Assembly: GCA_965637545.1 (NCBI GenBank)
Contig: OZ281495.1
Span: 4,526,001-4,590,000 of the forward strand
Direction: 5' to 3'
Length of the DNA stretch: 64,000 bases
From: Phallusia mammillata
Lineage: Eukaryota
Below, piece by piece: positions 1 through 64,000 of the stretch. Positions within the stretch are counted from its first letter, which is position 1; the number at the start of each line of letters is the position of its first letter. Below the pieces are notes generated by a model. That model made no database searches, was not told the DNA's origin, and worked only from the letters and a program-made list of their open reading frames with translations. The position numbers and the translations under genes were made by a program.

Positions 1-1394
1 GAATTTGATCCATCTGGATAATTATCTTGATATTGACACTTAAGTAGTATGGTACCCTTTTCCAATGTGGTATTTGGTGAACCAAATGTCCCATTGGTTG
101 AGAGACTTGCAGTTGGAGCTGATGAATTGGTTGCGTTGGGTAATAAAAGAAAAATATAAACAATGCTACAATCAATAAGTATTGAGCTAGCATTCACAAT
201 ATCTTGATTGTTGTTACAAAGTGCAAAACGCGCTGCAGATGCAGTGTTTCCAAAAATTGCAACAAACCAACAATCTTACCCGACCAATATTTCACCATAT
301 TTTCAACATCCCATTGAGCCGTTGACAAACAAATTGTGTTAGTGTTAGTGGCTGGGTTTCCATCGTGACTAAACAAACTACCTCCGTTTGAACAAGTAAA
401 CTCTCCTTGTGCATTATAAAAACCATTTGGGGCCAACACAGATACATTATGATCCAACTTTCGTTGACAATCTAAAACAACCAATGATAAATGAAGTTAC
501 AGTGAAGCAATTACCCTCTTGTCGTAGTTTACAAACTTATTGTTGCGAAGTTTATTTGTCAACCAAAATTCCAAATTTTCTGCATAAGAATGACACATTT
601 ATACCTAATATAGTGACTCTTCAGTTCAAGGCCTATTTTAAGCAGGAAAGAGTACCTTTGACTATAATATTCCTTACAGCTTGATATGTATAAGAGGTAT
701 TCAATTCAACAATGCTGTTATTCAATGTAAAACTTCTCGGTGACGTTACACCAAATGTCGTGTTAACACAAGTTCCGTTCCATTCAAGTGTTGTATATAA
801 TCCAGATGTGTTAAATGAACCAACATCGTACTTCGGTGGATCGCAAGCTTTGCCACACCAAAAATGAACCGCTTGGTCGGTGGAACCGTTATTGAAACAA
901 ACCGTCCATTGCAAATCAGGTAGAGTTTCTCCGTTCACAATACATGTACTGTACCGATACATCGTTCCATTGTAGTTTGTCGCCCAAGTTGTTTGATTTG
1001 GATACAAAACATCTGCAGTAAACGTTGTAATAAATTTACTGCACTATATGTTTTTTTGCTAGCTAGACGATAGGACTTTTAATTCCCCAAAAAAACATTG
1101 TTGGTGAAACAATTCCATTTTCTTGACTAAAAGCGCCAAATCTTTAAAGCATTAATTTGGTCCACCAACCAATCAGCGTATATTCTGCAATGTTTATTAT
1201 TTGCAAAAATATACCAATACAATAGACTAATTCTTCTTAATGCGTGGTCGTGAAAACTATTTAACTATTAATATAAACTTTGCAGGAAGTTTTGAACAAT
1301 AAGTCCTACCTCGTGTGTCGCTTTGACTTGTGGATGTGTTAACCCAAAAACCAAAATACCACAAACAAACAACAATAGAACGAAACATTATCAT
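1..1394 (-). CDS. Receptor copy A, 5' part: signal peptide, Ig-like D1, sushi/CCP, start of second Ig-like domain; runs off the left edge
   Basis: Exons (minus) 1394-1310 (MIMFRSIVVCLWYFGFWVNTSTSQSDTR, signal-like), 1012-656 (357 nt, C..LPDLQW Ig pattern), 471-280 (192 nt, C..NG..GEFTC..C..W CCP pattern) and 118-1 (open to the edge). All have GT/AG sites in phase 1, with lengths identical to copy D. Confidence 0.85.
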
Positions 1395-2601
1395 GAGTCA
1401 ACTTGCTGTCGTGCTTTTTTGTGTTCGATCAGATTCTCACTCACTCAGAACTGACTGACGACCAAGACCATATGCCATCTTGCGAAGTAGCCGAATTTTT
1501 TCCTGTGTTTACCTAATCTATACGATCACGGTGTTATTTTTTTGTTAGAACAGCGTGAGCTCTTGCACCAACTACAGGTTTGAGAACATAATGGTTTAAT
1601 CCCTTTTGCTCCGCGAAAAATTTGGTGGCATAGTTAGTTGTGAAAATTAAATCAACTATGAACACTACATCAGTAAATGAGGGGTAAATGACAACGTATG
1701 CACGAAAAGCTACTTTTTGCGCGAGACTTTTGTAGTGCGAATTTAATGAGGGGGGCAATCAAAACAAATGAGGGGCAATCAAAACAGTTGTGAAAACAAT
1801 TTATAAATTGTTTGTTACGTAGTTAGATAAATACACGTACACAAAATTTGTGTGTTGATCTCCTGTTCCCGTCTAACGGATACCGAGTCGGCCAAAAACC
1901 TGGCCCGAAAGTAAAAGTACAAGCCCGAAACTAGATCCAAACCACATATTGATAAGGCAGAATTGAGTCCAAGCGATTTATCATCTTAAAATTGCGACAC
2001 TAAGACATGTTAACACACATCAACTCCTCTTGTAAAAAGACATTTTAAATATTTCTACTTTCTTTTTTACCGTATTTTGAACAGGTATAGCAAATTAAGG
2101 GTTTGGCAAAACCTTTAAACTGTTGCCAGCGGATAATTTTGACCCTGGACAATGTAAACTGTACAGCGTATGGCAAATACACGGAAGTTTCGACACAAGC
2201 TGCATAAACGCGTGTAAACCAAACACCTGAGTTTATGGCACATAGAAACACAATTGGCTAAAAAATGTGCGAGTCCACAACATTTACTCGACCAACATGA
2301 AACAACCCACTGAATTATCACAGTAAAATTGTTAACATTACCTACGTCCAATAACTTTTGGAGTGTTGTTAAGTTTGGAAGTAGCAAACACACACGTGGT
2401 TGTTCTTGTTTATGTTACCAAGTGACTGCAATAACTTACTCCTTGCCGACATCTAGGAGTATAAATTTTTCACAACGCCCTACATGTAAAAATGTGGACT
2501 TGGTCTATCTCTAAAAACATTACTGGTTTAAAAAGGTAGTTTCCTGAATCAAGTCTGTTTTAAGTTTCTTAAACTCTGAATTTGAATGTAATGATCTATA
2601 A

Positions 2602-2710
2602 CACCTATCTGTTTTTTTATACGCAATTCTTTTAAAACACATACTTTCGAGCTCTTAACACCTGTCTGTTTTTTTATACGCAATTATTTTAAAACACATA
2701 CTTTCGAGCT
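2602..2710. repeat. Local tandem duplication (~55 bp x2) private to the first unit
   Basis: acacct(a/g)tctgttttttatacgcaatt(c/a)ttttaaaacacatactttcgagct occurs twice here, but once at the equivalent sites near 10492 and 18303. Confidence 0.85.
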
Positions 2711-3129
2711 TTTTGGCTGCTACCTATAAGTCAGTTTTAAACCAAATGTTTTCTTTTAATCAAACGCAACACTTATCCATACAGAATCGTCTCTAAAATA
2801 GAATGAAAGGCACCTCAATAACAGTTCATTGAAACTATGCGGAGCCGAACAAAAGCGTGCCTCAGAAAAGACCACGGCAGTGGCCAGCATGTTACCATCA
2901 GTCACTTGTGAAGTAACCGTGCACTGCCAATTTGTGCAATAGCACACACATACACATTGTAAACAAATTTGTGACAGTATTACATCCAAGTGAACTGAGT
3001 TTCTTACATGAGTCTAAGCTATGTGGCACAGGGTGGTCGACATATGTAAAGATTACTTAGCGGGTTGTGGTGTGCTTTTCTACTTTGCGTAGTATCGGTG
3101 TGCCTGGAAATGCAAGAACAACAAGACGC

Positions 3130-5596: not shown

Positions 5597-8500
5597 TTAC
5601 TGGTCATACACTTCATAGGTTGTGTCTGTTGGTCCCTCTCTGTCATTATCTGTGCATGACAAATTAACTACTTTTTAACAGGTATTTCGGTTGAATATTG
5701 CAACTCAGCACTAACCATTTGAAGAGCGAAAGTCAGCAGTAGAATGGTCAACCTTCATTTCTTCGAAAAATAAAAAAAAAGTTTAATGAGTATACGGAAA
5801 ACATTATGGATATTTGTGTATTGACAACGAAAGAAATGCTACACCAACCTCAATTTCGATTCGCACTATTTGATTGTCTTCTTTAAAGATCTTAACACTT
5901 TCTCCACTTACCCGTCATGAGGAAAACATTCCTAGGCAGAAGAATTAATAACAGTCCAAACAATTCTATTAAAGCAATAGCACCCACGACACTAACAGCA
6001 ATAATAAGTGCTTGGTTTTCATTTCCATCACATATTTCGGATTCCATAATAATGGTAAACATCACAACAAGATCAGTAAATCCCTCAATTGGAGATTTAA
6101 TACGTAACTGGTAAGTTTCAACAGCTGCAAATGTCTTAAAAAGGTATATCAGTTGCGAACAATGATAATTAGAAAAAAAAAACTTACCTCAATTACAAAA
6201 ACAAACGTTTGGTTTGTGCTATCGTTGCGGTCAGCTGTTAAAGAACAACCACGACAAACCACAATTTCATCTACAAAAATGGCAATAAACAATAAGCACA
6301 CTTACATTACGGTGCTTGAATTTTGAATAAATGTTACCGTCTTTGGTCAACGTGTATTGAAATGAAGGGGGGTTGGAAGTAAACCTTACAAAACAACTTC
6401 CATTGACCACCTCATCCGATTGACAAGTTGTGTGACTGTTGATTTTTTCAGGTGAATCTGTCAAATACTTACATTTTAGTAATATTATTCAAATGCATTG
6501 AGATAAATAAATTGTAAATTTCATTAAAAAAGTATATTTTATTGAAAGTTACAGTACATGTTTAGCACCACCGACTTACATGTAACGTTTAAAAAGTATG
6601 TGCTTGTAAAATTTCCAAAAGCATCGCTTGTTAGGCAAATATAGTTTCCAAGGTCTTTTTTGGTCACATTATTCAAATTTAAAACGTTATTAAATTTGTC
6701 TATACCCCGCGTCTGGTCAGAAATTTGCCACTGAAATTTTGTGTCGAGTTCAATTGAATAGTCGATCGAGCAACTTAATGAGACATTTTCTCCGGCTTTT
6801 GTGGGTGTGTTGTTCACAACAAGCCCAGTAATGTAGGGTGCCCCTGAACAAAAACCAATTAATAATTTAACAAATCTACAAACAAAACATGAAACTCAAT
6901 ACTAAAACCTCCGGAACGTTTGTGGCAAACGTCATAAAAACTTACTAACGGTAACAACTGTGACATTAAGTTGCGAAACATCGCTACCAGCAATGTTACT
7001 TGAATTGCATGAAACTGATGCAGATTCTCCAAAACTGTGAGACAAAACACAAGAACTCTTGTTATGAATTATCTTTCCGATTTGAAATTTACAAATAGCA
7101 GGTGGATTTGCTTCTTTCAAACAGTTTAATGTCACTGTTTGTTCACCATCAAGAAAAACACCAAATTCATTTTCAATCGATAAATTACTAGATGTAATAT
7201 ATATCTTATTATGAATAGGTGGATCTGCAATAAATGTTGGTTGTTTTAGTTGTTTATGTTTCATTACGCATGAAAGCCAAAACCTACAAAAGACGTCAAG
7301 AAAAATCGTGCTCTGTAACATGTCGAATTTGTCTTCTGTCTGACATGTGTAGTTCCTTGTGTCAAACTTTTCTCAAGAATTGCTACTGTTCTTTTCTTTT
7401 TTCCCATTGAAAAGCCAATAACAGTTCGCAGGAGGATTTGCTTCATTTAAGCAATAAAATGTGACAATCTGTTCAGAGTTTAAAAGAATCACTTCACCCG
7501 ATGTTATTAGATTTGGTGATGCAAGATATGAGAGTTGTACATTATGTGGAGGATCTGTATAGCGTAAAGCATACATATTAAACTATGTAAATCTGTAGCA
7601 CAAATCTTACTTACACTGTTCATTCAGAATTGGAACGTTTGATTTTCCAAGTGTGTCGTCAAACTCCGTGTATGATGCGACATTCCTGTGCTTGAATGTT
7701 GGAGTAAACGGTACTCCTAGAGTCTATACAAATGTTTAAAAAATATCAAAACGCTATATTTCTAAACCTTCCGAAAAACGACTATACCAACGTTAAATAA
7801 ACATCACTAATATACACACTCGATTCCTGTCATCTTAAACCTCCTGGAATCAAACACCGTTAAACTAATAAAGCGACTGATCAAAAAACGAAACATCATA
7901 AACTTGAACAGTTTTTCCAATTATTGTATATATTGAGTATAACTTGCCTTGGAAACATTGTTATGGAGAATTGTACCAAAGTAATATCTAGAATTTGACC
8001 CATTTGGATATTGATTTTGATATTGACACTTAAGTAGTATGGTGCGATTTTCTGGTTTGGTATATGATGAACCAACAGTTCTATTGATTGAGACACTTGC
8101 AGTTGGAGCTGTATGTTTGTGTGGTTAATTGATTGCGTTCAGTAATAAAAGAAGCAGCAAAATAAGAACACTGCTACAATCAATATGTATTGAGCTAGCA
8201 TTTACAATATCTGGATTGTGGTTACAAACTGCAAAACGCGCTGCAGATACAGTGTTTCCAAAAATGCAACAAACCAACCAATCTTACCCGACCAATATTC
8301 CACTATATTTTCAACATCCCATTGAGCCGTTGACAAACACTTTGTGTTAGTGTTAGTGGCTGGGTTTCCATCGATAGTGAACAAACTTCCTTCGCTTGAA
8401 CAAGTAAACTCTCCTTGTGTGTTATAGAAACCATTTGGGGCCAACACAGATACATTATGATCCAACGTTCGTTGACAATCTAAAACAACCAATGATAAAT

Positions 8501-9334
8501 GAAGTTACAGTGAAGCAAATACCCTCTTGTCGTAGTTTTGAAACTAACTGTTGCAAAGTTTATTTGTCAACCGAAATTCGAAATTTTCTGCATAAGAATG
8601 ACACATTTGTACTTAATATAGTGACTCTTCAGTTCAAGGCCTATCAATTCAACAATGCTGTTATTCAATGAAAAACTTCTCGGTGACGTTACACCAAATG
8701 TCGTGTTAACACAAGTTCCGTTCCATTCAAGTGTTGTATATAATCCAGATGTGTTAAATGAACCAACATCGTACTTCGGTGGATCGCAAGCTTTGCCACA
8801 CCAAAAATAAACCGCTTGGTCGGTGGAACCGTTATTGAACCAAACCGTCCATTGCAAATCAGGTAGAGTTTCTCCGCTCACATTGCATGTACTATACCAA
8901 TACATCGTTCCATTGTAGTTTGTCGCCCAAGTTGTTTGATTTGGATACAAAACATCTGCAGTAAACGTTGTAATAAATTTACTGCACTATATGTTTTTTT
9001 ACTAGCTAGACGACTTTTAATTAAAAAAAAAAAACATTGTTGATGAAACAATTCCACTTTCTTGACCAAAAGCGCCAAATCTTTAAAGCATTAATTTAGT
9101 CCACCAACCAATCAGCATATATTCTGCAATGTTTTAAATTTGCAAAAATATATAAAATACAATGGACTAGTTTTTCTTAATCCGTGGTCCTGAAGACTAT
9201 TTAACTATTAATATAAACCTTGCAGAAAGTTTTGAACAATAACTCCTACCTCGTGTGTCGCTTTGACTTGTGGATGTGTTAACCCAAAAACAAAAACACC
9301 ACAAACAAACAACTAATGAACGAAACATTGTCAT
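5597..9334 (-). pseudogene. Receptor copy B, probably pseudogene (or truncated secreted product)
   Basis: Exons 9334-9250, 8955-(donor lost), 8479-8288, 8108-7948, 7723-7615, 7554-7373 (stop), 7224-6946, 6843-6580, 6457-6338, 6270-6188, 6134-5912 (TM) and tail exons to TAA at 5597. Lesions versus A/D: a 65-nt deletion at 8644/8645 removes the exon-2 donor, a 21-nt deletion in exon 5 removes the F-strand Cys, a ~350-nt deletion creates TGA at 7375-7373, and a ~54-nt deletion near 5884 removes the first tail-exon acceptor. Confidence 0.8.
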
Positions 9335-12300
9335 GAGCCAACTTCCTGCCTTGCTCTTTGTGTTCGATCAGATTCTCACACACTCAGCTTACTGACGGCC
9401 AAGACCATATGCCATATTGCGAAGTAGCTAAATTTTTTCATGTGTTTACCTAATCTATACGATCACGGTGTTATTTTTTTGTTAGAACAGCGTGAGCTCT
9501 TGCATCAACTACAGGTTTGCACGAAAAGCTACGAAAAGTTTAAACAGGTTAGTGTGAATTTAATAAGGGGGAGGGGTGGGGGGGGTAAATACGGTGCTAT
9601 ACTAAACTCAACAAACTATTCCAACAGAATAACATTAGGTCTAAATAAAACGATAGAAAATTGAAAGACGTCGACCCAATTAAAACAGTTGTGAAAAAGT
9701 CAATTTATAAATTGTTTGTTACGTAGTTAGGTAAATACACGTACACAAAATATGTGTGTTGATCTCCTGTTCCCGTCTAACGAATACCGAGTAGGCCAAA
9801 AACCCTAGCCCGAAAGTAAAAATACAAGCCCGAAACTAGATCCAAACCACATATTGATAAGGCAGAATTGAGTCCAAGCGATTTATCATCTTAAAATTGC
9901 GACACTAAGACATGTTAACACACATCAACTCCTCTTGTAAAAAGACATTTTAAATATTCCTACTTTCTTTATTACCATATTTTAAACAATCGTAGCAAAT
10001 TAAGGGTTTGACAAAACCTTTAAACTGTTGCCAGCGGATAACTTTGACCCTGGACTATGTAAACTGTACAGCGTATGGCAAATACACGGACGTTTGGGAC
10101 ACAAGCTGCATAAACGCGTGTAAACCAAACACCTGAGTTTATGGCACATCGAAACACAATTGGCTAAATAATGTGTGAGCCCACAACATTTACTCGACCA
10201 ACGTAAAACAACCCATTGAATTATGGCAATAAAATTGTTAACATAACCTACGACCGAAAACTTTTGGAGTGCTGTTAAATTTGGAAGTAGCAAACACACC
10301 GTGGTTGTTCTTGTTCATGTTACCCAGTGACTGCAATAACTTACTCCTTGGCGACATCTAGGAGTATAAATTTTTCACAACGCTATGGACTTGGTCTATC
10401 TCTAAAAACATTACTGGTTTAAAAAGGTAGTTTCCTGAATCCAGTCTGTTTTAAGTTTCTTAAACTCTGAATTTGAATGTAATGATCTATAACACCTATC
10501 TGTTTTTTTATACGCAATTATTTTAAAACACATACTTTCGAGCTTTATGGCTGCTACCTACAAGTCAGTTTTAAATCAAATGTTTTCTTTCAACCAAACG
10601 CAACACTGATCCATACAGAATCGTCTCTAAAATAGAATGAAAGGCACCACAATAAAAGTTCAATGAAACTATGCGGAGCCGAACAAAAGTGTGCCTCAGG
10701 AAAGACCACGGCAGTGGCCGGCATGTTACCATCAGACACTTGCGATATAACCGTGCACTGCAAATTTGTGCAAAGGCACACACACACACATTGTAAACAA
10801 ATTTGTGACAGTATTATACCCAAGTGAACTGAGTTTCTTACACGAGTCTCAGCTATCGACATATGTAAAGATTACTTAGCGGGTTGAGGTGTGCTTTTCT
10901 ACTTTGCGTAGTATCGGTGTGCGTGGAAATGCAAGAACAACAAGACGCATACTTTAAGGTCAACGGCCATTTAAGCTGGTCTTGCTCACTTTTAGGCTGA
11001 TAGTCCCCAGTTCACGCATATTCGTGACACATGTGCTCACCTATGAAACGTGTTTTTTCAGATTGTTCGTTGTTCCTCATAATCGTCGATGTTTTCAATT
11101 CAGGCGAGATAATTCTCACAACTTGCTCGAGAAGACAAACCGAGTTTGTACGGAACAACCGAGTTTAAACAACCGGTGTCTTTGCAGTAGGTTATATCTA
11201 CTGAAGTTGAGTGTGCAAACAAAATCGTCACAGAATTTGCCGATCAGTTTATCTATGCGGCATTCACCGGGGATTTGACGTTAAAGCTCACGACCCAAGT
11301 ACTGTGCTAGGTCCTTTCTGGTTGGGGATGAATCTAAAGACAGGATTAGAAAAAATCTTCTTTCAAGATTAAAAAATGACAGATATAATAGCCACGTAAT
11401 TGGCAGCCACGTGATTGAATCCAGCCACTGTTGGTAACAATGTTATTTTTCCCAAAACTTGTTACACCAGCTTACCAGGAAAGATGTGCAACATTACCCC
11501 AAAGAACGTATCTTAAATCAGTGGTTCCCAAAAATTTTTAACGTAACTCAAAAACTTCTAAACAGTTTTTTGTGGTTTATCGCGACTCCCGGATTGTTGT
11601 AATTTTAGTTGTATTTTTGTCTGGTTTATTGTCAACTAATGCATCATTTTGGAAATGTTTAGTCAAAACATCAGACAGATATTATTCGTTTGTTTCACTA
11701 AATATTCTTATTTACCCGAAGTTTTTGGTGCATTGTCAGCCCATCAACACTTAACAATACGATGACAGACAACGTATCGCGTCGCAAACAAAGGTAAATA
11801 TTAATACGGCAAAGAAATTTGTCATAAAACATTTTGAAGCTTCCGGAAAAAAGCGACCAAAGGGGTTGATAGGGTTGGTTTTTAACATGGCAAACGAAAG
11901 TGCATTTTTACTGCTTTTTGTTCCAGAGCTCGAAAACCCACAAAAACTTGACATACTCGAATAGAAAACTAAAGTAAAAAATCAGCTAATAAGACAGCAT
12001 TTGCATTTGTATCTTATAAATAACGCCAGTACCTTCCAACCACTACCAGAAACATTGTTGTTATTTCAAAAATAGTTTTTCTGCAACGTGATGCACTTTT
12101 GAAGGTTTTAAACACTTATTTTACACAATGACAACAATTTGCAAATCTACATTAAACAAAAAGTGTTTAAAAATTTTTCCCGATGATAATCTGTCTGTAT
12201 CAATGCCGTGAAATTGATAAGATACGAAGTAAAGCTCGACCACGCGGTGGTGTGTTGGGAATTTGCAAACAAATGATGTCCGATGATCTGATTCGGGCTA

Positions 12301-13436: not shown

Positions 13437-16400
13437 TTATTGGTCATACACTTCATAGGTTGTTTCTGTTGGTCCCTCTCTGTCATTATCTGTGCATGAC
13501 AAATTAACTACTTTTTAACAGGTATTTCGGTTGAATATTGCAACTCAGCACTAACCATTTGAAGAGCGAAAGTCAGCAGTAGAATGGTCAACCTTCATTT
13601 CTTCTTCGAAAATAAAAAAAAAGTTTAATGAGTATACGGGAAACATTATGCCTTTTTATGCATTGACAACGAAAAAAATGATACACCAACCTAAATTTCG
13701 ATTCGCACTATTTGATTGTCTTCTTTGAGGACTTAGGTTTGTATCTGCGATAATGAGTTTAATCAAAACACGGTTTTCAAAGATCTTAACACAGTCTCCA
13801 CTTACCTACCTTGAGGAAAACATTCCTAGGCAGAAGAATCAATAACAGTCCAAATAATTCGATTAAAGCAATAGCACCGACGACACTAACAGCAATAATA
13901 AGTGCTTGGTTTTTATTTCCACCACATATTTCGGATTCCATAATAATGGTAAACATCACAACAAGATCAGTAAATCCCTCAATTGGAGATTTAATACGTA
14001 ACTGGTAAGTTTCAACAGCTGCAAATGTCTTAAAAAGGTATATCAGTTGCGAACAATGATAATTAGAAAAAAAAAACTTACCTCAATTACAAAAACAAAC
14101 GTTTGGTTTGTGCTATCGTTGCGGTCAGCTGTTAAAGAACAACCACGACAAACCACAATTTCATCTACAAAAAAGGCAATAAACAATAAGCACACTTACA
14201 TTACGGTGCTTGAATTTTGAATAAATGTTACCATCTTTGTCCAAACAACTTGACCACCTCATCCGATTGACAAGTTGTCTGACTGTTGATTTTTTCAGGT
14301 GAATCTGTCAAATACTTACATTTTAGTAATATTATTCAAATGCAGTGAGATAAATAAATTGTAAATTTCATTAAAAAAGTATATTTTATTGAAAGTTACA
14401 GTACATGTTTAGCACCACCGACTTACATGTGACGTTTAAAAAGTATGTGCTTGTAAAATTTCCAAAAGCATCGCTTGTTAGGCAAATATAGTTTCCAAGG
14501 TCTTTTTTGGTCACATTATTCAAATTTAAAACGTTATTAAATTTGTCTATACCCCGCGTCTGGTCAGAAATTTGCCACTGAAATTTTGTGTCGAGTTCAA
14601 TTGAATAGTCGATCGAGCAACTTAATGAGACATTTTCTCCGGCTTTTGTGGGTGTGTTGTTCACAACAAGCCCAGTAATGTAGGGTGCCCCTGAACAAAA
14701 ACCAATTAATAATTTAACAAATCTACAAACAAAACATGAAACTCAATACTAAAACCTCCGGAACGTTTATGGCAAACGTCATAAAAACTTACTAACGGTA
14801 ACAACTGTGACATTAAGTTGCGAAACATCGCTACCAGCAATGTTACTTGAATTGCATGAAACTGATGCAGATTCTCCAAAACTGTGAGACAAAACACAAG
14901 AACTCTTGTTATGAATTATCTTTCCGATTTGAAATTTACAAATAGCAGGTGGATTTGCTTCTTTCAAACAGTTTAATGTCACTGTTTGTTCACCATCAAG
15001 AAAAACACCAAATTCATTTTCAATCGATAAATTACTAGATGTAATATATATCTTATTATGAATAGGTGGATCTGCAATAAATGTTGGTTGTTTTAGTTGT
15101 TTATGTTTCATTACGCATGAAAGCCAAAACCTACAAAAGACGTCAAGAAAAATCGTGCTCTGTAACATGTCGAATTTGTCTTCTGTCTGACATGTGTAGT
15201 TCCTTGTGTCAAACTTTTCTCAAGAATTGCTACTGTTCTTTTCTTTTTTCCCATTGAAAAGCCAATAACAGTTCGCAGGAGGATTTGCTTCATTTAAGCA
15301 ATAAAATGTGACAATCTGTTCAGAGTTTAAAAGAATCACTTCACCCGATGTTATTAGATTTGTTGATGCAAGATATGAGAGTTGTACATTATGTGGAGGA
15401 TCTGTATAGCGTAAAGCATACATATTAAACTATGTAAATCTGTAGCACAAATCTTACTTACACTGTTCATTCAGAATTGGAACGTTTGATTTTCCAAGTG
15501 TGTCGTCAAACTCCGTGTATGATGCGACATTCCTGTGCTTGAATGTTGGAGTAAACGGTACTCCTAGAGTCTATACAAATGTTTAAAAAATATCAAAACG
15601 CTATATTTCTAAACCTTCCGAAAAACGACTATACCAACGTTAAATAAACATCACTAATATACACACTCGATTCCTGTCATCTTAAACCTCCTGGAATCAA
15701 ACACCGTTAAACTAATAAAGCGACTGATCAAAAAACGAAACACCATAAACTTGAACAGTTTTTCCAATTATTGTATATATTGAGTATAACTTGCCTTGGA
15801 AACATTGTTATGGAGAATTGTACCAAAGTAATATCTAGAATTTGACCCATTTGGATATTGATTTTGATATTGACACTTAAGTAGTATGGTGCGATTTTCT
15901 GGTTTGGTATATGATGAACCAACAGTTCTATTGATTGAGACACTTGCAGTTGGAGCTGTATGTTTGTGTGGTTAATTGATTGCGTTCAGTAATAAAAGAA
16001 GCAGCAAAATAAGAACACTGCTACAATCAATATGTATTGAGCTAGCATTTACAATATCTGGATTGTGGTTACAAACAGCAAAACGCGCTGCAGATACAGT
16101 GTTTCCAAAAATGCAACAAACCAACCAATCTTACCCGACCAATATTCCACTATATTTTCAACATCCCATTGAGCCGTTGACAAACACTTTGTGTTAGTGT
16201 TAGTGGCTGGGTTTCCATCGATAGTGAACAAACTTCCTTCGCTTGAACAAGTAAACTCTCCTTGTGTGTTATAGAAACCATTTGGGGCCAACATAGATAC
16301 ATTATGATCCAACGTTCGTTGACAATCTAAAACAACCAATGATAAATGAAGTTACAGTGAAGCAAATACCATCTTGTCGTAGTTTTGAAACTAACTGTTG

Positions 16401-17179
16401 CAAAGTTTATTTGTCAACCGAAATTCGAAATTTTCTGCATAAGAATGACACATTTGTACTTAATATAGTGACTCTTCAGTTCAAGGCCTATCAATTCAAC
16501 AATGCTGTTATTCAATGAAAAACTTCTCGGTGACGTTACACCAAATGTCGTGTTAACACAAGTTCCGTTCCATTCAAGTGTTGTATATAATCCAGATGTG
16601 TTAAATGAACCAACATCGTACTTCGGTGGATCGCAAGCTTTGCCACACCAAAAATAAACCGCTTGGTCGGTGGAACCGTTATTGAACCAAACCGTCCATT
16701 GCAAATCAGGTAGAGTTTCTCCGCTCACATTGCATGTACTATACCAATACATCGTTCCATTGTAGTTTGTCGCCCAAGTTGTTTGATTTGGATACAACAC
16801 ATCTGCAGTAAACGTTGTAATAAATTTACTGCACTATATGTTTTTTTACTAGCTAGACGACTTTTAATTAAAAAAAAAACATTGTTGATGAAACAATTCC
16901 ATTTTCTTGACCAAAAGCGCCAAATCTTTAAAGCATTAATTTAGTCCACCAACCAATCAGCATATATTCTGCAATGTTTTAAATTTGCAAAAATATATAA
17001 AATACAATAGACTAGTTTTTCTTAATCCGTGGTCCTGAAGACTATTTAACTATTAATATAAACCTTGCAGAAAGTTTTGAACAATAACTCCTACCTCGTG
17101 TGTCGCTTTGACTTGTGGATGTGTTAACCCAAAAACAAAAACACCACAAACAAACAACTAATGAACGAAACATTGTCAT
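13437..17179 (-). pseudogene. Receptor copy C, probably pseudogene
   Basis: Near-identical to B over exons 1-8, with the same lesions: donor deletion at 16491/16492, exon-5 deletion and TGA at 15222-15220. A private deletion shrinks exon 9 to 73 nt (14304-14232, versus 120 nt), causing a frameshift. ATG at 17179, terminal TAA at 13437. Confidence 0.8.
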
Positions 17180-20100
17180 GAGCCAACTTCCTGCCTTGCT
17201 CTTTGTGTTCGATCAGATTCTCACACACTCAGCTTACTGACGGCCAAGACCATATGCCATATTGCGAAGTAGCCAAATTTTTTCATGTGTTTACCTAATC
17301 TATACGATCACGGTGTTATTTTTTTGTTAGAACAGCGTGAGCTCTTGCATCAACTACAGGTTTGCACGAAAAGCTACGAAAAGTTTAAACAGGTTAGTGT
17401 GAATTTAATAAGGGGGAGGGGTGGGGGGGTAAATACGGTGCTATACTAAACTCAACAAACTATTCCAACAGAATAACATTAGGTCTAAATAAAACGATAG
17501 AAAATTGAAAGACGTCGACCCAATTAAAACAGTTGTGAAAAAGTCAATTTATAAATTGTTTGTTACGTAGTTAGGTAAATACACGTACACAAAATATGTG
17601 TGTTGATCTCCTGTTCCCGTCTAACGGATACCGAGTAGGCCAAAAACCTAGCCCGAAAGTAAAAGTACAAGCCCGAAACTAGATCCAAACCACATATTGA
17701 TAAGGCAGAATTGAGTCCAAGCGATTTATCATCTTAAAATTGCGACACTATGACATGTTAACACACATCAACTCCTCTTGTAAAAAGATATTTTAAATAT
17801 TTCTACTTTCTTTTCTACCATACTTTGAACAGTTGTAGCAAATTAAGGGTTTGGCAAAACTGTACAGCGTATGGCAAATACACGGAAGTTTGGGACACAA
17901 GCTGCACAAACGCGTGTAAACCAAACACTTCAGTTTATGGCAGATCGAAACACAATTGGCTAAATAATGTGCGACTCCACAACATTTACTCGACCAACAT
18001 GAAACAACCCACTGAATTATCACAGTAAAATTGTTAACATAACCTACGTCCAATAACTTTTGGAGTGTTGTTAAGTTTGGAAGTAGCAAACACACTCGTG
18101 GTTGTTCTTGTTCATGTTACCAAGTGACTGCAATAACTTACTCCTTGGCGACATCTAGGAGTATAAATTTTTCACAACGCCCTACATGTAAAAATGTGGA
18201 CTTGGTCTATCTCTAAAAACATTACTGGTTTAAAAAGATAGTTTCCTGAATCCAGTCTGTTTAAGTTTCTTAAACTCTGAATTAGAATGTAATGATCTAT
18301 TATACCTGTCTGTTTTTTTATACGCAATTATTTTAAAACACATACTTTCGAGCTTTTCGGCTGCTACCTATAAGTCAGTTTTAAACCAAATGTTTTCTTT
18401 CAATCAAACACAACACTTATCCATACGGAATCGTCTCTAAAATAGATGCAAGGGCACCACAATAACAGGTTTATGAAACTATGCGGAGCCGAACAAAAGT
18501 GTGCCTCAGGAAAGACCACGGCAGTGAACATGTTACCATCAGTCACTTGCGAAGTAACCGTGCACTGCCAATTTGTGCAATAGCACACACATACACATTG
18601 TAAACAAATTTGTGACAGTATTATACCCAAGTGAACTGAGTTTCTTACACGAGTCTAAGCTATCGACATATTTAAAGATTACTTAGCGGGTTGTGGTGTG
18701 CTTTTCTACTTTGCGTAGTATCGGTGTGCCTGGAAATGCAAGAACAACAAGGCGCATACTTTAACGTCAACGGCCATTTAAGCTGGTCTTGCTCACTGAT
18801 AGGCTTATAGTCCCCAGTTCACGCATATTCGTGACACATGTGCTCACCTATGAAACGTGTTTTTTTTCAGATAGTTCGTTGTTGCTCATTATCGTCGATG
18901 TTTTCAATTCAGGCGAGATAATTCTCACAACTTGCTCGAGAAGACAAATACAGAACAACCGAGTTTAAACAACCGGTGTCTTTGCAGTAGGTTATATCTA
19001 CTGAAGTTGAGTGTGCAAACAAAATCGTGACTAAATTTGCCAAACAGTTTATCTCTGCGGCATTCACCGGGGATTCGATGTTGGAGCTCACGACTCAAGT
19101 ACTGTGCTAGGTCCTTTCTTGTTGGGGATAAATCTAAAGACAAGATTAGAAAAAATATTCTTTCAAGATTAAAAATTACAGATATAATAGCCACGTAAAT
19201 CGGTAATGGAATCGAGCCACTTTTGGTAACAATGTTATTTTTCCCACAACCCGTTATACCAGCCCACAGGAAAGATGTGCAACATTACCCTAAACAACGT
19301 ATCTTAAACCAGTGGTTCCTAAAAAATTTTAACGTAACTCAAAAACTTCTAAACAGTTTTTTTGTGGTTTCTCGCGACTCCCGGATTGTTGTAATTTTAG
19401 TTGTATTTTTGTCTGGTTTATTGTCAACTAATGCATCATTTTGGAAATGTTTAGTCAAAACATCAGACAGATATTATTCGGTTTTTTTTCGACTAAATAT
19501 TCTTGTTTGCCCGATCTTCTTGGTGCATTGTCAGCCAGACAACACTTAACAATACGATGACAAACGACGTATCGCGTCGCAAACAAAGGTAAATATTAAT
19601 ACGTCAATGTAAGTTGTCGTAAAACATTTTGAAGCTTTCGGAAAAAAGAGACCAAAGAGGTTAATAGGGTTGGTTTTTAACATGGCAAACGAAAGTGCAT
19701 TTTTACTGCTTTTTGTTCCAGATCTCGAAAACCCACAAAAACTTGACATACTCGAATAGAAACCTAAAGTAAAAAATCAGCTAATAAGACAACATTTGCA
19801 TTTGTATCTTATAAATAACGCCAGTACCTTCCAACCACTACCAGAAACATTGTTATTATTTCAAAAATAGTTTTTCTGCAACGTGATGCACTTTTGAAGG
19901 TTTTAAACACTTATTTTACACAATGACAACAATTTGCAAATCTACATTAAACAAAAAGTGTTTAAAAAATTTTCCCGATGATAATCTGTCTGTATCATTG
20001 CCGTGAAATTGATAAGATACGAAGTAAAGCTCGACCACGCGGTGGTGTTTTGGGAATTTGCAAACAAATGATGTCTGACAGGCAAAGATTCGGGCTATAA

Positions 20101-21232
20101 AATATTCGTCTTTATAACTTCTGGACACATATGTTCTTCAACATGCTAATGCCACAGTTTAAAACTCTATTTGATACATATTACAATTGAAGCAAAGGTT
20201 TATGATTTATCCCCTTACTAAAGACAAAACATTTCAATCTACATAGTGGTGTTAAAGGGGTTTGTCATTCTACCTTTAGCAGTTGTGTTCATACAGTTGA
20301 CAAGCATGGGAACTGGAAGGCGTTATTTTTTGAACTTATATGTTAATTAACCTAGAAAAAACAACCAGCTAAACCCTCGTGTTGAGCTGTAGTGTAACCT
20401 TACATGAAGCTCGGTGCCTACGTGAGACCAGAAGAAAAGTAAACTTTCATTGTTTGTTTCACAATCTTTCGTTGATAACTGTAGCACAGTGCTTGTTGAC
20501 AGATACTTCAGGCCACAGTTGCAGCCTGGGAAAATTCAATACACTATCGCTGTGTTAACAATCTCATACTTGGTCCTGAATGTTAATTAGCCTAACTTTA
20601 CAAAACAACTAAACATAAGATTTTCAAGCAATCACTAAACTAATACCAATTTGTCGGTTTTGATTTACTGCTTATTTTTTAAAACCTCTGATAACCTTTA
20701 TTTTACATCAACCTGCAAATGATCTATTTACGCAACTTGAGAATGTACCAACAACTAGTAATTAAGTACAAGCAACTAGCAGTAAGATAAATTTTAGGAA
20801 TAAATCTGTTTTGGAGGGCAATGCGTATATCCTCTTATTCTTGGCACGATTGACAAGGATATATGTAAGAGAATATCAACAAACAATTAGTTATCAGGAG
20901 GCTAATATTGTCACATCACTTATCAACGTTTGGGATTGGGGTAAAAGTCTAGTGGAATGGCAATATACGAAGTAAAGAAATAACTTACATGGTTGTTTGA
21001 TTAAAAAAAACATCACAGCAAAACCATAAGGTTTATTGTCAAAAACAAACTCATAACATCGACAAAACAACAACCATTGTGTACAAAGTTAGCTGTGTAC
21101 AAGTATCTGGGTTATATAAAACCAGCAACCACTACAGTGTGAATCTAAAATGCAAGATAAGCAAGGCCAATGGCATAGAATTTTCGAAATATTAGATATA
21201 CCAAAAATTTATTAAGGAATAGATTAAACGTT

Positions 21233-38320: not shown

Positions 38321-38874
38321 GCATGTTGGTAAAAGTCAACCTCTTATTGACCTTTCAATTGTAAACTGATTAAACTGTGAGGTAAAACGAGCGACAAAAA
38401 CGAATTGAATTCAAGTCACCGAAACTATTCCACGACAGCTGCAATGTCAATAACTTTAGAAAAACTTTACAGAAAATCCGTAAATGTAGGACTGTTCGTT
38501 ACGCAGCATTTAATCAAACATTATCACACTAATAATAATGCGTGATGTAAATTAAACAAAACTAAGAATATGTGCAAAGAAGACGATTTTGAATGAAGTA
38601 ATAATTTGCTGATTCTTGATTGCGAATCCGGCAAAACTCGCCTCCGTCTCCTACTTTCTGAAAACATTTGGCTTTAATGAACCACTAGAACCAAACAAAC
38701 ATGATTTATCGATAAATGTCGGTTTTAAAAAGTATGTTAGCCAGCATAAATACGAATAAAAAGTACGAAACTTTTCTTCAAAAAGACATGTTATACATGT
38801 TTGAAGCCAATACGTAAAGGCTAATATACTTTGAAAACTAAACATTCAGTTTACTCACATTGTAAGAATCAAGA

Positions 38875-44800: not shown

Positions 44801-45116
44801 GTAGTTTGCTGTCTGTAAACATGTATAAAATATACGATAATTGGCAGCAACAAATGATACATTTTCTAAAATTTAGCGATATTAAGCAACAAAAGTGAAA
44901 ACTCTTTACAAAACGACGCAAACTGCAATAAAATACGGTGTTTAGAAACTTAGTATCAAACGGCCATATCTTAAAAACTTCTCTCAATTTTTAAGTTTCC
45001 AATTAAGACCGGAAAAATGTCAAAAAGTAAATACCATCTGCAGCATCCAGCGTAAACAACCAGAGTAGCACACAAATTTTGTACACCATACTTCCCGAAC
45101 GTGTATGAGCTGCCAT
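38875..45116 (-). CDS. Receptor paralog E, intact (~807 aa): SP - Ig D1 - CCP - four Ig-like domains - uncharged TM - long tyrosine-motif tail
   Basis: 17 exons: 45116-45035, 44812-44423, 43392-43201, 43139-42979, 42682-42553, 42220-41942, 41877-41614, 41550-41431, 41369-41287, 41227-41005, 40685-40605, 40252-40184 (GC donor), 39824-39729, 39614-39519, 39329-39264, 39023-38949, 38891-38875. Exon lengths 192/130/279/264/120/83/223 match D exactly. TM is AIIAGSIVGAIAFIVIVLVAVFFL. The 39519 donor and the last exon are tentative. Confidence 0.85.
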
Positions 45117-57700: not shown

Positions 57701-58266
57701 TTTCTCCGCTAGGTGGAAATGAGAGCAACACATTTAACCACTCAAATGTCAGGTTAATTGGTATTGAAAATTTAGCAAATGGCCTCATTTTTAACACAAA
57801 TTATTTAAAATGAAGGAAATTGATCTTCGCGGAATTAATTTTCAAAAAAATTTAAGCTTGAACAGAAAAAGAAGAAATGTAAAAATGATGTAACATTTAC
57901 AATAAGCGTGGGTTTGTCGTTTAGAAATATCGTTCTCAGATTACAAGTCGTAGTTTTACATAGGATTGCATCGTCAGAAGATTGAAACAAATGTCGAGTG
58001 TGATCGTACCTATCAATCGTGTATGCTAATTATATTGTGCTGATGTGAGAGTTAAACAAACGTACACAAACGATCGATTTTATTTGCTATTGTTGAAGTA
58101 GGGGGTTTCATGAGAAAATTAAACAAACCATTTATAGTCTGCTAACGCTTTCATTTCTTGTTCTTGACTAACAACAGTTCGCGTAATACAATACTTAACC
58201 ATTTTTTCTTGTCTGCACCCCCTTATATTGTCGGCGGAATTGGAATAATTTCCAATCGCTCTAATC

Positions 58267-62100: not shown

Positions 62101-63436
62101 GTAAATGCTTTAAAACGTTTTGTCGCCGTAATAAATATTTTGCACCAACCATTGTGGTCCGTTACTTGGAGTAAAGTTTTCTAACGTTTGCATTTTTTAA
62201 ACGTGGGTTTCCCAGTACTAGGTTTTTATTCCTGATACATGTACTCATTAGTAAATTTCTTTTCAAATGCAGAGATTTTTTAAAAGAATTATTACTTTTA
62301 AATTACTTTCGCTTTTCCGTGATCAAAAGTTTGACAGAAAAAAGACAAAATTGTCAGGACCATCGGCATTCAAGGTGATACAGTATACACTTAACAAAAA
62401 TACTGAATTGTGGAAAACAGCCTTATGCAAGTAAATAATTGGTCAAATGGAATATTTGTTTTACGAAATACTCTACACAGAAAATATAACTTAAATCAAC
62501 AAAAAGCGATAGTTGCAATTGCCCATTTGAAGTGAAAAAAAAATAACATTTATATTTCCATAAATGATGCTTATAATTTAAAATTAAGTTTTTTTGTAAT
62601 AAATTGTTTTGCATTGAATTTCAAAACATACAACATGCAAAAGCTATAGTTGAACAATGCTAGGAATAAAAAAAACGATTAAAGCACATGGAGTTTTGTG
62701 GCATGTAGCTACTCATCGAGAGTTGTGGTCTGTTTACAAAGGAGATATAATTTATAATAAATAAATGAAAGAGTCTGCAGTACACGCCTATGTTATTATA
62801 CAACATTGCCAATAGTGGAAGATATAACTGCGTTAGGTGTATCTTTAAACAACTTTTAAAAACACATTTTTTGATTAATTTGTACGATTATAAACAACGC
62901 ATGATTTTAACGGAAATGGTTGTTAAACCGCCGAACAAGCAAATTAGCAAATGTACTTGGCTGAGGGCCAGCTTATGACTTTATGGCGATCAACGGTATG
63001 GAACTTGTTTGATCTTGAATTAACCGACGACTACTGTATCTTGTTTTCACTGAGTTGTCCGGGGTTTTATATGTCTGAGCCTATTTAAATGGCTGTTGCT
63101 AAACCAGTTACTGGTTTAGGTAAATACTTGATAGTTATCGCATTGGACTGACAAACTTAGTTAATTATTACCGCGCGACATTTAGTAGTAAATGGTAAAC
63201 AACTTACTGTTGTGCAGTTTTTTAATCAAAAAATAAAAAGGATAAAAAGTTTGTAGCGTCGCTTCACGCCTATTGCGTTTAGAGATAACACGCTGTACTA
63301 TAATGGTCTCATCAGTATTGTCACAATGTAGTTTTACATGAAACAAATAAAACAAAGCATTTCTCGAAACCTCTTGTCGACAGGCGAGTTTGATGACAAA
63401 AGTTAATTTGTCACAAAACACTTAATTTAGTGAAAA

Positions 63437-63956
63437 TTAATTAATGCTTACATCGCTTACATGGAGGTCACGTGTTGGAGAATTTTTGCCTGAAACAAAC
63501 AAATCAATTCGGTGTATGGATGTCAAACAAACGAACCTACTGTTAGAATTTAAGTTTAGCGTCTTACGTGTTGGAGGTTTAGGTGCCATAGATTTTTTGC
63601 CGGAATTTGTCGACTGGTCTTCTGCAAAAAATCTTGATAAGTTGCGGTTAAAATACACAATCAAGCCAAAAACTCATTTAGGAAAAAATACATATCAAGC
63701 TTACATCTTGTTTGTTCTTATGTTGGAAAGTCGATTCATGTATTAAAATAATTTGTTCAGTCGTTTTTAGATTTAAATAGCCCGATACAAACAGCACAAA
63801 ACTGAATATAACCTTTACCATTATGTTCATAATCCAGGTTTGAAGTTTGATAAGAAGCTCCCCCGTATAAGGGATTAATTCTCTCTTCCTTTTCACCTGC
63901 TGGGCGCACCTCCACATCGCTTGCAACATAAATTGGATTCAAACGTTCCTCTTTAA
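63437..63956 (-). CDS. Receptor member I: last cytoplasmic exons of another E-type paralog; the rest lies beyond the right edge
   Basis: Exons 63956-63819 (KEERLNPIY...GEKEERINPLYGGASYQTSNLDYEHN), 63621-63541 (KKSMAPKPPTRK) and 63489-63437 (stop). All are phase 1. KEERINPLY is identical to the first tail exon of E. Confidence 0.75.
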
Positions 63957-64000
63957 CTACAAAACATAATATATAAGACTAAGTATCAAATCACTACCAG

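What the first reader, a model, noticed from the sequence alone, without database searches (positions are those of the whole stretch)
1..64000. Candidate undescribed paired-receptor / allorecognition-type locus of Ig-CCP receptors
At least six members of one Ig-CCP-Ig(n)-TM family share an ectodomain plan but fall into two signalling classes. D-type members (B, C, D) have an acidic TM residue and a short tail. E-type members (E, I) have a neutral TM (seen in E) and a long multi-tyrosine tail. The cluster shows birth-and-death evolution (fresh duplicates, pseudogenes, exon gain or loss) and a hypervariable N-terminal domain. Established: this combination characterises vertebrate paired receptors (KIR, LILR, Siglec, SIRP), Hydractinia Alr genes are clustered polymorphic Ig receptors, and the Botryllus fuhc locus has Ig- and sushi-containing membrane proteins. 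Inference: this may be an independently evolved immune or self/non-self locus. I do not recognise the Ig-CCP-Ig5-TM architecture as a named family.
Basis: partly seen in the sequence, partly recalled or inferred. Interest (0 to 1): 0.88.

Follow-up and report, generated by a model that had tools for sequence, protein, structure and literature searches.

The report
FcoR-like Ig–Sushi receptor gene cluster
A probable sea-squirt genome carries a fast-evolving tandem cluster of cell-surface receptor genes whose layout closely matches the 'fester co-receptor' (FcoR) family described in 2024-25 at the tissue-compatibility locus of the colonial sea squirt Botryllus, so it is real and interesting but not an undescribed kind of receptor.

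Summary
The minus strand carries one family of multi-exon type-I receptor genes. Each has a signal peptide, a family-specific beta-rich N-domain, a Sushi/CCP domain, 4-6 Ig-like domains and one TM helix. Only D (21598-25575) and E (38873-45116) look intact. B and C are lesion-bearing near-duplicates. A and I are cut by the window edges, and a relic lies at 26.8-27.0 kb.

D-type TM helices carry a mid-membrane Glu and the tails are short. The E-type tail (about 188 aa) is built of mini-exons with repeated [KE]EER[IL]NPxY and [DE]xYAxV motifs.

Evolution is birth-and-death with mosaic identity and a diverged patch in the N-domain, but dN/dS is below 1.

"Undescribed" is outdated. Botryllus FcoR proteins (PNAS 2025, PMC12582321) have the plan SP-Ig-Sushi-Ig-Ig-TM with a Tyr-motif tail, including a [A/D]VYxxV motif, and sit in birth-and-death clusters.

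This locus differs from FcoR in four ways: more Ig domains, NPxY modules, TM-Glu short-tail forms, and no FF partner within the window.

Homology to FcoR, the species and the function are untested. The strict vertebrate "paired receptor" criteria are not met.

First-stage notes report similar Ig/CCP receptor arrays 60 kb upstream and on another piece of this genome.

The parts
1..1396 (-). Member A, 5' part only (SP exon ~1308-1396, N-domain exon 656-1012, Sushi exon ~278-473, start of Ig2 4-120). Cut by the window start. Sushi Cys4 is replaced by Tyr (codon 287-289).
5910..9336 (-). Member B, D-type, probable pseudogene. Lesions: a 64-bp deletion at 8644/8645 removes the N-domain exon end and its donor; Sushi Cys4->Tyr (8295-8297); Ig2b lacks its Cys; in-frame TGA at 7373-7375 in an Ig3/Ig4 hybrid exon. 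The TM helix is 5937-6011 with Glu at 5964-5966.
13810..17181 (-). Member C, near-copy of B (99.2% over 14250-17860 vs 6403-10017) with the same lesions (stop at 15220-15222). It also has a truncated Ig7a exon with a 5-bp deletion. The TM helix is 13831-13905 with Glu at 13858-13860.
21598..25575 (-). Member D, apparently intact. Exons: SP 25491-25575, N-domain 24574-24930, Sushi 24204-24395, Ig2 24098-23941 + 23774-23645, Ig3 23299-23586, Ig4 22970-23227, Ig5 22630-22908, Ig6 22264-22527, Ig7-like 22023-22142 + 21873-21955, stalk/TM ~21598-21823. The TM helix is 21623-21697 with Glu at 21650-21652.
21230..21597 (-). Putative short D-type tail. Either read-through (KTGKWRLC*) or three phase-1 mini-exons ending ...TTYEVYDQ*. 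It has no NPxY or YAxV modules.
   Evidence: inferred, no transcript data
24713..24859 (-). Diverged central patch of the N-domain (codons 24-72). It holds 21 of the 27 amino-acid differences between D and A.
   Evidence: Fisher p=1.8e-5; pS 0.35, pN 0.23 vs flanks pS 0.07-0.13, pN 0.04
26813..27033 (-). Relic of Ig7-like exons from a decayed family member upstream of D. The surrounding 25.4-27.9 kb is an older copy (72-79% identity) of the repeat unit's spacer.
41005..45116 (-). Member E ectodomain and TM. Exons: SP 45035-45116, N-domain 44423-44812, Sushi 43201-43392, Ig2 42979-43139 + 42553-42682, Ig5-type 41942-42220, Ig6-type 41614-41877, Ig7-like 41431-41550 + 41287-41369, stalk/TM 41005-41227. 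The neutral TM helix is 41030-41104. E lacks the Ig3/Ig4 pair of D.
38873..40941 (-). E cytoplasmic tail: 7-8 phase-1 mini-exons (40888-40941, 40605-40685, 40469-40531, 39729-39818, 39519-39614, 39264-39329, 38949-39023, 38873-38891). They carry NPLY...DAYAV, (NPPR), NSLY...EVYAEV, NPLY and DVYAQV. An extra exon-like piece at ~40180-40256 (DTYAQV) has no phase-compatible donor.
63437..63956 (-). Tail of member I (E-type): VKEERLNPIY...EKEERINPLY...SYQTS...LDYEHN, then a basic K/P-rich exon and the terminal exon. The ectodomain lies beyond the window end.

Best explanation
This is part of a lineage-specific, rapidly turning-over cluster of type-I surface receptor genes in a probable ascidian. 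Their plan is: signal peptide, a family-specific beta-rich (V-like?) N-domain, one Sushi domain, a stalk of 4-6 Ig-like domains, and one TM helix. This is the plan of the Botryllus FcoR 'fester co-receptor' family with a longer Ig stalk.

Shown:
- The gene models.
- The two TM/tail classes.
- Long-term purifying selection between D and E.
- Tandem duplication, mosaic identity consistent with gene conversion or recombination, exon loss and pseudogenes.
- A diverged patch in the membrane-distal N-domain.

Inferred mechanism:
- The N-domain plus Sushi tip binds a ligand.
- E-type receptors signal when their repeated NPxY-x(11-13)-[DE]xYAxV modules are tyrosine-phosphorylated and recruit PTB and/or SH2 (possibly tandem-SH2) proteins.
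- D-type receptors have no such tail. They signal, or are regulated, through a partner held by the mid-membrane glutamate.
- The biological role is cell-surface recognition of the immune or self/non-self type, by analogy with FcoR. This is the weakest step.
For: - Family and tandem structure.
- Consistent phase-1 exon models with open frames of 812 aa (D) and 801-822 aa (E).
- Ig exons pass the Pfam thresholds for ig/Ig_3.
- C2-set-like Ig5.
- Sushi: language-model match score 0.95, 201 shared features, 74 of 100 hits carry Sushi, plus C-x24-C-x20-C-x5-W-x8-C spacing.
- N-domain model is all-beta with 9 strands, and the Foldseek list is rich in TCR-V, antibody-V and PD-1 domains.
- 26-30 N-glycosylation sequons and a single TM helix.
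- TM Glu in B, C and D; neutral TM in E.
- Tail motifs are confined to E and I.
- D vs E dN/dS is about 0.25 over 308 codons.
- Mosaic identity, 5' half 70-88% vs 3' half 90-98%.
Against: - No sequence-level link to any FcoR/FF protein could be tested.
- The N-domain has no detectable homolog anywhere, and its Ig fold is unproven: pLDDT 56, best Foldseek E-value 0.08.
- Pfam and PDB HMM searches do not recognise the Sushi exon, and its AF2 model is poor.
- FcoR has two membrane-proximal Ig domains, not 4-6.
- No FF-like Ig-Sushi-3TM gene lies head-to-head with these genes in this window.
- No canonical ITIM or hemITAM is present.
- NPxY motifs are not reported for FcoR.
- No expression or polymorphism data exist, the species is unknown, and only two of the copies are intact.
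Confidence: 0.6

Rival explanations
1. One reading: an independently evolved, convergent paired-receptor system. D-type would be activating receptors (charged TM, adaptor-coupled) and E-type inhibitory receptors that share the same ligands, unrelated to any described family.
For: There are two TM/tail classes on one ectodomain plan. The cluster shows birth-and-death dynamics. No sequence homolog of the N-domain exists in 1.84 billion proteins.
Against: D and E ectodomains are only 43-66% identical, and D has two extra Ig domains, so shared ligands are unlikely. The TM charge is acidic, the opposite of vertebrate activating receptors. No canonical ITIM is in the E tail. The same Ig-Sushi-Ig...TM-Tyr plan already exists in tunicates as FcoR, so common descent is more economical than convergence.
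Confidence: 0.15
2. An IgSF adhesion, engulfment or endocytic receptor family with no role in self/non-self recognition. The NPxY motifs would serve as PTB-adaptor or internalisation signals (as in LDLR, integrin beta or Draper/CED-1 tails), and the long glycosylated Ig stalk would mediate cell-cell or cell-matrix contact.
For: [KE]EER[IL]NPxY is repeated three times in E and twice in I. The Ig5-type domain resembles C2-set domains of adhesion molecules such as CD22, CD80 and CEACAM. Purifying selection acts on the stalk domains.
Against: There is no ortholog-like conservation. Turnover is rapid, with pseudogenes and exon loss. The most diverged part is a patch of the membrane-distal domain. 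The NPxY motifs are coupled at fixed spacing to YAxV motifs of the type found in FcoR tails.
Confidence: 0.2
3. A mostly decaying array. The D-type units are non-functional remnants or decoys kept similar by gene conversion, and only E (and perhaps I) is a working gene.
For: B and C share at least four disabling lesions. A, B and C lack Sushi Cys4. Relics lie at 26.8-27.0 kb and 18.2-18.3 kb.
Against: D has an uninterrupted 12-exon frame with intact splice sites and all the conserved Cys residues. D vs E dN/dS is 0.25. The TM Glu and juxtamembrane sequence are identical in all three D-type copies.
Confidence: 0.1

Closest known systems
Botryllus schlosseri FcoR (fester co-receptor) family, Rodriguez-Valbuena et al., PNAS 2025 (PMC12582321)
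   Same: Both are type-I proteins with a signal peptide, an N-terminal Ig-like domain encoded here by one exon, a Sushi domain in second position, further Ig domains, a single TM helix and a tail of varying length with tyrosine motifs. E's DVYAQV fits the 'core-2' [A/D]VYxxV motif, and YAVV, YAEV and YAQV fit 'core-1'. The tail is spread over many small exons. The family is clustered and shows duplication, recombination of 5' and 3' gene halves, and partial or pseudogene copies. The second type of Ig domain is CD22/C2-like in both.
   Different: This locus has 4 (E) or 6 (D) Ig-like domains after Sushi instead of 2. It has repeated NPxY modules and no canonical ITIM or hemITAM. Its short-tail members carry a TM glutamate, which is not described for FcoR. 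No head-to-head FF partner is present in this window. Paralogs here are much more alike than the 32% average reported for FcoR. Sequence homology, species, expression and polymorphism are untested.
Botryllus Fester family (FF: fester/FF1, uncle fester/FF3)
   Same: Both have the N-terminal Ig-like plus Sushi cassette. FF proteins lack tyrosine motifs, as the D-type tail largely does. Both are fast-evolving clustered families.
   Different: FF proteins have three TM helices and no Ig stalk. D-type proteins have one TM helix and six further Ig-like domains.
Vertebrate paired receptors (KIR, LILR, SIRP, Siglec/CD22)
   Same: All are clustered IgSF genes with birth-and-death evolution, long-tail and short-tail forms, and a charged residue in the TM helix of the short-tail form. 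The V-like tip on a C2-type stalk is Siglec-like.
   Different: The TM charge here is acidic, not basic. No ITIM is present. Ectodomains of the two classes are only 43-66% identical. A Sushi domain is inserted after the tip domain. There is no sequence relationship.
Hydractinia Alr allorecognition cluster
   Same: Both are large clusters of polymorphic or fast-evolving Ig-like type-I receptors, some with ITAM/ITIM-like tails.
   Different: Alr proteins have no Sushi domain and different (V-set-like/I-set-like) domain types. Hydractinia is a cnidarian and the genes are unrelated in sequence.
Draper/CED-1/MEGF10 engulfment receptors
   Same: In both, the tail combines NPxY (a PTB-adaptor site) with a second tyrosine motif at ITAM-like spacing.
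   Different: Their ectodomain is EMI/EGF repeats, not Ig-Sushi. They are conserved single-copy orthologs, not a fast-evolving cluster.

Membership tests
FcoR family (Botryllus, PMC12582321) | Type-I membrane protein: signal peptide and a single TM helix | tested here: met
   Hydrophobic N-terminal exons are present: MIMFRSFVVCLWCFYFCFVTATSQ in D and ...VYKICVLLWLFTLDAAD in E. Each gene has one 25-aa TM segment.
FcoR family (Botryllus, PMC12582321) | N-terminal Ig-like (often V-type) domain | tested here: inconclusive
   The AF2 model has 9 strands but pLDDT 56 and pTM 0.52. Foldseek against PDB gives a best E-value of 0.08; many TCR-V, antibody-V and PD-1 hits have TM scores of 0.3-0.4. AFDB hits are generic beta-sandwiches. 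There are no Pfam or PDB HMM hits. hhalign to the family's own Ig exons is uninformative. The Cys23-x11-Trp35 and Cys81 spacing is Ig-like.
FcoR family (Botryllus, PMC12582321) | Sushi/CCP domain in second position | tested here: met
   The four-Cys plus Trp spacing fits Sushi. The language-model match to Sushi clusters scores 0.95 with 201 shared features, and 74 of 100 hits are Sushi. Caveat: no Pfam or PDB HMM hit, a poor AF2 model, and Cys4 is lost in A, B and C.
FcoR family (Botryllus, PMC12582321) | Two further Ig domains between Sushi and TM (four ectodomain modules in all) | tested here: not met
   E has 4 Ig-like modules after Sushi and D has 6. Ig3-Ig4 and Ig5-Ig6 form an internal duplicate pair.
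FcoR family (Botryllus, PMC12582321) | Cytoplasmic tail with ITIM, hemITAM, core-1 (YxxI/L/V) or core-2 ([A/D]VYxxV) tyrosine motifs | tested here: met
   The E tail has DVYAQV (core-2), EVYAEV, and YAVV/YAEV/YAQV (core-1). It has no canonical ITIM or hemITAM. Spacing of the last two motifs is 55 aa, not 29-33. D-type tails lack these motifs.
FcoR family (Botryllus, PMC12582321) | Clustered multigene family diversifying by duplication, copy-number change and intergenic recombination | tested here: met
   Tandem 7.85-kb units, a 99.2% identical B/C tract, mosaic 5'/3' identity, exon loss, pseudogenes and relics. Haplotype copy-number variation itself is not testable from one assembly.
FcoR family (Botryllus, PMC12582321) | Head-to-head pairing with an FF gene (Ig-Sushi-3TM); this holds for the chr5/chr11 clusters but not the chr9 FcoR-only cluster | tested here: not met
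   There are no plus-strand family hits and no multi-TM gene in the window. An unchecked first-stage note (s1-351703) describes head-to-head Ig/CCP pairs 60 kb upstream.
FcoR family (Botryllus, PMC12582321) | Detectable sequence or structural homology to deposited FcoR proteins; same or related species | not testable with these tools
   The FcoR sequences are in GenBank but could not be fetched. Spliced queries cannot be submitted, and single-exon queries found nothing. The species was not identified.
Vertebrate-type paired receptors (KIR/LILR/SIRP logic) | Activating and inhibitory members with near-identical ectodomains | tested here: not met
   D vs E identity: N-domain 43%, Sushi 48%, Ig2 47%, Ig5-7 60-66%. 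D has two extra Ig domains.
Vertebrate-type paired receptors (KIR/LILR/SIRP logic) | Short-tail member with a basic TM residue that docks an acidic ITAM adaptor | tested here: not met
   The TM residue is Glu (acidic) in B, C and D. No gene with a basic-TM partner was seen in the window.
Vertebrate-type paired receptors (KIR/LILR/SIRP logic) | Long-tail member with a canonical ITIM [ILVS]xYxx[ILV] | tested here: not met
   None of the 8 tail tyrosines of E fits the motif. The -2 positions are D, E, P, R or S, with a wrong +3 residue.
Immunoglobulin superfamily (Pfam ig / Ig_3) | At least one domain above the Pfam gathering score | tested here: met
   D Ig4: Ig_3 33.9 bits, ig 32.8 bits. D Ig6: ig 31.7, Ig_3 30.7. 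E Ig6: ig 27.7. The Ig5-type domain is C2-set-like by language model.

The most novel reading that the evidence does not exclude
The locus is a true homolog of the Botryllus FF/FcoR histocompatibility-receptor superfamily in a different, possibly solitary, ascidian. That would show that this receptor system predates botryllid coloniality. Here the split between a tail-less 'sensor' and a tyrosine-motif signaller would be made inside one single-TM family, by a TM glutamate and short tail versus NPxY-YAxV modules, rather than by separate FF and FcoR families.
Probability: 0.25. Interest if true: 0.8.

Novelty: new variant of a known kind. Interest (0 to 1): 0.5.

Why it matters
The Botryllus authors state that invertebrate allorecognition genes have 'no obvious homologs outside of familial clades'. 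An FcoR-like cluster in another ascidian would give a handle on where the fuhc-linked receptors came from. It would also allow asking what such receptors do in an animal that may not fuse, and whether the tail logic (YAxV 'core' motifs, here coupled to NPxY) is conserved.

The TM-glutamate short-tail forms suggest a testable partner-docking mechanism that has not been described for this receptor kind.

If the genome turns out to be a botryllid, the finding reduces to re-annotation of a known cluster.

Tried and rejected
- Profile HMM search of the N-domain against 1.84 billion representatives gave only three spurious bacterial repeat proteins.
- The same profile against PDB sequences gave nothing. 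The Sushi profile against PDB gave nothing meaningful.
- The metagenome contig scan for the N-domain found no relative.
- Exact-ORF look-ups to identify the source species found three ORFs not on record.
- AF2 on single exons with 4-sequence alignments gave low-confidence models, so the fold searches are only suggestive.
- hhalign of the N-domain against the family's own Ig exons was uninformative; even the two Ig exon types do not match each other at this alignment depth.
- Rfam found no RNA family.
- Pfam on spacer ORFs and on the plus-strand Cys-rich exons found nothing.
- tblastn and a motif scan found no E-type tail relics downstream of the D-type genes.
- A test for positive selection in the N-domain gave pN/pS 0.66, not above 1. 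Ig6 shows 9.5 nonsynonymous vs 0.5-1.5 synonymous changes between D and B/C, but the numbers are too small to interpret. The TM row was misregistered by one codon and is ignored.
- Full-length searches with spliced proteins were not possible. Spliced sequences have no reference and I did not type them in, so the search for homologous proteins was left unused.
- The paper's supplementary sequences are not held.

Full report
**What is there**

The window is AT-rich (GC about 35%) eukaryotic DNA with very short introns. Self-blastn shows three tandem units of about 7.85 kb on 1-23.7 kb. An older, 72-79% identical copy of the unit's spacer lies at 25.4-27.9 kb.

Stop-free stretches on the minus strand line up as exons of one gene family. 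I built spliced models from AG/GT sites and reading-frame phase.

D (25575->21598) has 12 exons. All introns are phase 1 except two phase-0 introns that split Ig2 and separate Ig7 from the TM exon. The model gives an open 812-aa frame through the juxtamembrane region.

E (45116->38873) has 10 ectodomain/TM exons plus 7-8 cytoplasmic mini-exons. It gives 801-822 aa ending in a stop.

tblastn with both models finds the following members:
- A: 5' part only, cut by the window start.
- B, C, D and E.
- Ig7-like relics at 26813-27033 and an Ig6-like relic at 18229-18324.
- An E-type tail (I) at 63437-63956, whose upstream exons lie beyond the window end.
- Nothing on the plus strand.

**Domain content**

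- Pfam recognises the Ig4/Ig6-type exons above the gathering score and the Ig3/Ig5-type exons weakly. A protein-language-model search places the Ig5-type exon with C2-set/Ig_2 domains of the CD22 and CD80 kind.
- The second exon has the spacing C-x24-C-x20-C-x5-W-x8-C. It matches Sushi clusters at 0.95 with 201 shared features, and 74 of 100 hits are Sushi. Pfam and a PDB HMM search do not detect it, and its AF2 model is poor. I accept Sushi with that caveat.
- The N-domain (118 aa, one exon) is family-specific. It has no Pfam hit, no PDB hit and no real hit among 1.84 billion representative proteins. Its AF2 model is all-beta with nine strands, but pLDDT is only 56.
- Foldseek for the N-domain returns many TCR-V, antibody-V and PD-1 domains at weak scores. 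The AFDB search returns generic beta-sandwiches. An Ig-like fold is plausible (Cys23-x11-Trp, Cys81) but not shown.
- The ectodomains carry 26-30 N-glycosylation sequons.

**Two classes**

B, C and D share the TM helix ALIIAVSVVGAIALIELFGLLLILL, with a mid-membrane Glu (codons 5964-5966, 13858-13860, 21650-21652). The TM exon ends at a consensus donor. The tail is therefore either eight residues by read-through or about 55 aa from three plausible phase-1 mini-exons ending TTYEVYDQ. Exon and intron identity between copies is too uniform to decide between these.

E has a neutral TM helix and a tail of about 188 aa with eight tyrosines. These are arranged as repeated modules of [KE]EER[IL]NPxY followed 12-13 residues later by [DE]xYAxV: NPLY...DAYAV, NSLY...EVYAEV, NPLY...DVYAQV, and a degenerate NPPR...DTYAQV pair. 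The I tail has NPIY and NPLY. These motifs occur nowhere else in the window, so the D-type genes are not simply E-type genes with visible decayed tails.

**Integrity and evolution**

Only D and E look intact. B and C share these lesions:
- A 64-bp deletion that removes the end of the N-domain exon and its donor.
- An in-frame TGA inside an Ig3/Ig4 hybrid exon.
- An Ig2b exon that has lost its Cys.
- Sushi Cys4->Tyr, which A also has.

C additionally has a truncated Ig7a exon.

B and C are 99.2% identical over 3.6 kb. D is 70-88% identical to B/C in the 5' half (SP to Ig2) but 90-98% identical in the 3' half (Ig5 to TM). This is a mosaic consistent with gene conversion or recombination between the 5' and 3' gene halves. 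E lacks the Ig3-Ig4 pair, which in D is an old internal duplicate of Ig5-Ig6.

D vs E gives dN/dS of about 0.25 over 308 gap-free codons, so both lineages have been under purifying selection.

Within the N-domain, 21 of the 27 D-A differences fall in codons 24-72 (Fisher p=1.8e-5). Synonymous divergence is raised there too (pS 0.35 vs 0.07-0.13 in the flanks), and pN/pS is 0.66. The next intron is 94% identical. This is a retained or imported divergent tract, not demonstrated positive selection.

**Comparison with what is known**

A full-text search led to Rodriguez-Valbuena et al., PNAS 2025 (PMC12582321).

- In Botryllus schlosseri, fester and uncle fester belong to a Fester family (FF: Ig-Sushi-3TM, no Tyr motifs).
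- FcoR tails carry ITIMs, hemITAMs, core-1 (YxxI/L/V) or core-2 ([A/D]VYxxV) motifs.
- FcoR genes lie in clusters on three chromosomes that evolve by birth and death and by intergenic recombination. Two of these clusters hold head-to-head FF/FcoR pairs and one holds FcoR genes only.
- Homologs were first seen in Botrylloides at about 20% identity.

The family in this window has the same order of modules, a single-exon N-domain, a tail spread over many small exons, a DVYAQV that fits core-2, and the same evolutionary style. Its Ig5-type domain resembles CD22 C2 domains, as reported for FcoR.

It differs in having 4-6 rather than 2 membrane-proximal Ig-like domains and in having NPxY modules, which are not mentioned in the paper. 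It has no canonical ITIM or hemITAM, its short-tail members carry a TM Glu, and no FF partner lies in this window. The locus is best described as FcoR-like.

**What could not be tested**

I could not test sequence or structural homology to FcoR. Spliced proteins cannot be submitted by reference, the paper's sequences are not held, and single-exon queries find nothing.

The species is unknown. First-stage notes report Ciona-type spliced leaders elsewhere in this genome. The compact gene structure argues for a small-genome ascidian. The absence of any N-domain homolog in public proteomes argues against a well-annotated species, though I had no positive control for that library's coverage.

**The paired-receptor analogy**

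Three defining features of vertebrate paired receptors fail here. The ectodomains are only 43-66% identical. The TM charge is acidic rather than basic. There is no ITIM. The resemblance is therefore at the level of 'clustered IgSF receptors with long-tail and short-tail forms', not at the level of the mechanism of KIR, LILR or SIRP.

**Most likely mechanism (inferred)**

- The membrane-distal N-domain plus Sushi forms the ligand-binding tip on a glycosylated Ig stalk.
- E-type receptors are phosphorylated on the NPxY and YAxV tyrosines. They recruit PTB and/or SH2 proteins, and the 12-13-residue spacing would suit a tandem-SH2 protein.
- D-type receptors rely on the TM glutamate to bind a partner with a basic TM residue, or to self-associate.
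- An immune or self/non-self role is suggested only by the FcoR analogy. An adhesion or engulfment role is a serious rival.

**Links to other notes of this scan**

All of these are unchecked by me unless I state a test.
- s1-351703 describes head-to-head Tyr-free Ig/CCP genes coupled to Tyr-motif Ig genes 60 kb upstream. If true, that strengthens the FF/FcoR parallel.
- s1-349196 describes an Ig/Sushi receptor with five tail tyrosines on another piece of this genome.
- Notes on my own window about the TM Glu, the E tail mini-exons and the N-domain centre agree with what I measured.

Noticed in passing
window 28950-33150 (-): A multi-exon gene whose exons carry galactose-3-O-sulfotransferase motifs (FVFIKTHKTGSTS...; weak Pfam PF06990 hit, E=1.9e-4). 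It sits between the D-type array and E and could serve as a conserved 'framework' gene for synteny tests.
   Followed up: partly
window 47440-49880 (+): A plus-strand gene head-to-head with E. It has three Cys-rich 'CGC...C...GC.G...C' modules (weak HRM hit for the third, E=0.02) and one Cys-rich TM helix (AGAVAGIVVGCVLGCCMIAGAIYCCCC). It is not related to the Ig-Sushi family by tblastn. It is a different receptor family, possibly Sushi/HRM-like.
   Followed up: partly
window 53050-56400 (+): A second plus-strand gene with a similar Cys-rich module (54818-55048), a TM segment near 55643-55705, and an extremely Cys-rich stretch (56135-56380). No Pfam match.
   Followed up: no
window 2729-3285 vs 27301-27866; 1250-1720 vs 25431-25911: Only two blocks of the repeat-unit spacer are still alignable (72-79% identity) with the older copy upstream of D. 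One covers the signal-peptide exon and its 5' flank. The other has no recognisable coding content and may be a regulatory element or a dispersed repeat.
   Followed up: no
window ~40180-40256 (-): An exon-like piece in the E tail region (APQRSVTIGDTYAQVDIKKKQKGK) has a good acceptor but no phase-compatible donor and reads on to a stop. It could be an alternative terminal exon, comparable to the tail-switching splice variants reported for FcoR3/4, or a decayed module.
   Followed up: partly
window 4608-4670, 12434-12496, 20231-20293 (+): A hydrophobic 21-aa stretch containing a Lys (IYIVVLKGFVTLPLAVVFIQL) is present on the plus strand of each repeat-unit spacer. It is probably chance. I mention it only because a basic-TM partner for the D-type Glu would be of interest.
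   Followed up: no
window 2599-2710: A 57-bp unit repeated twice in tandem (96% match) in the spacer of the first unit.
   Followed up: no
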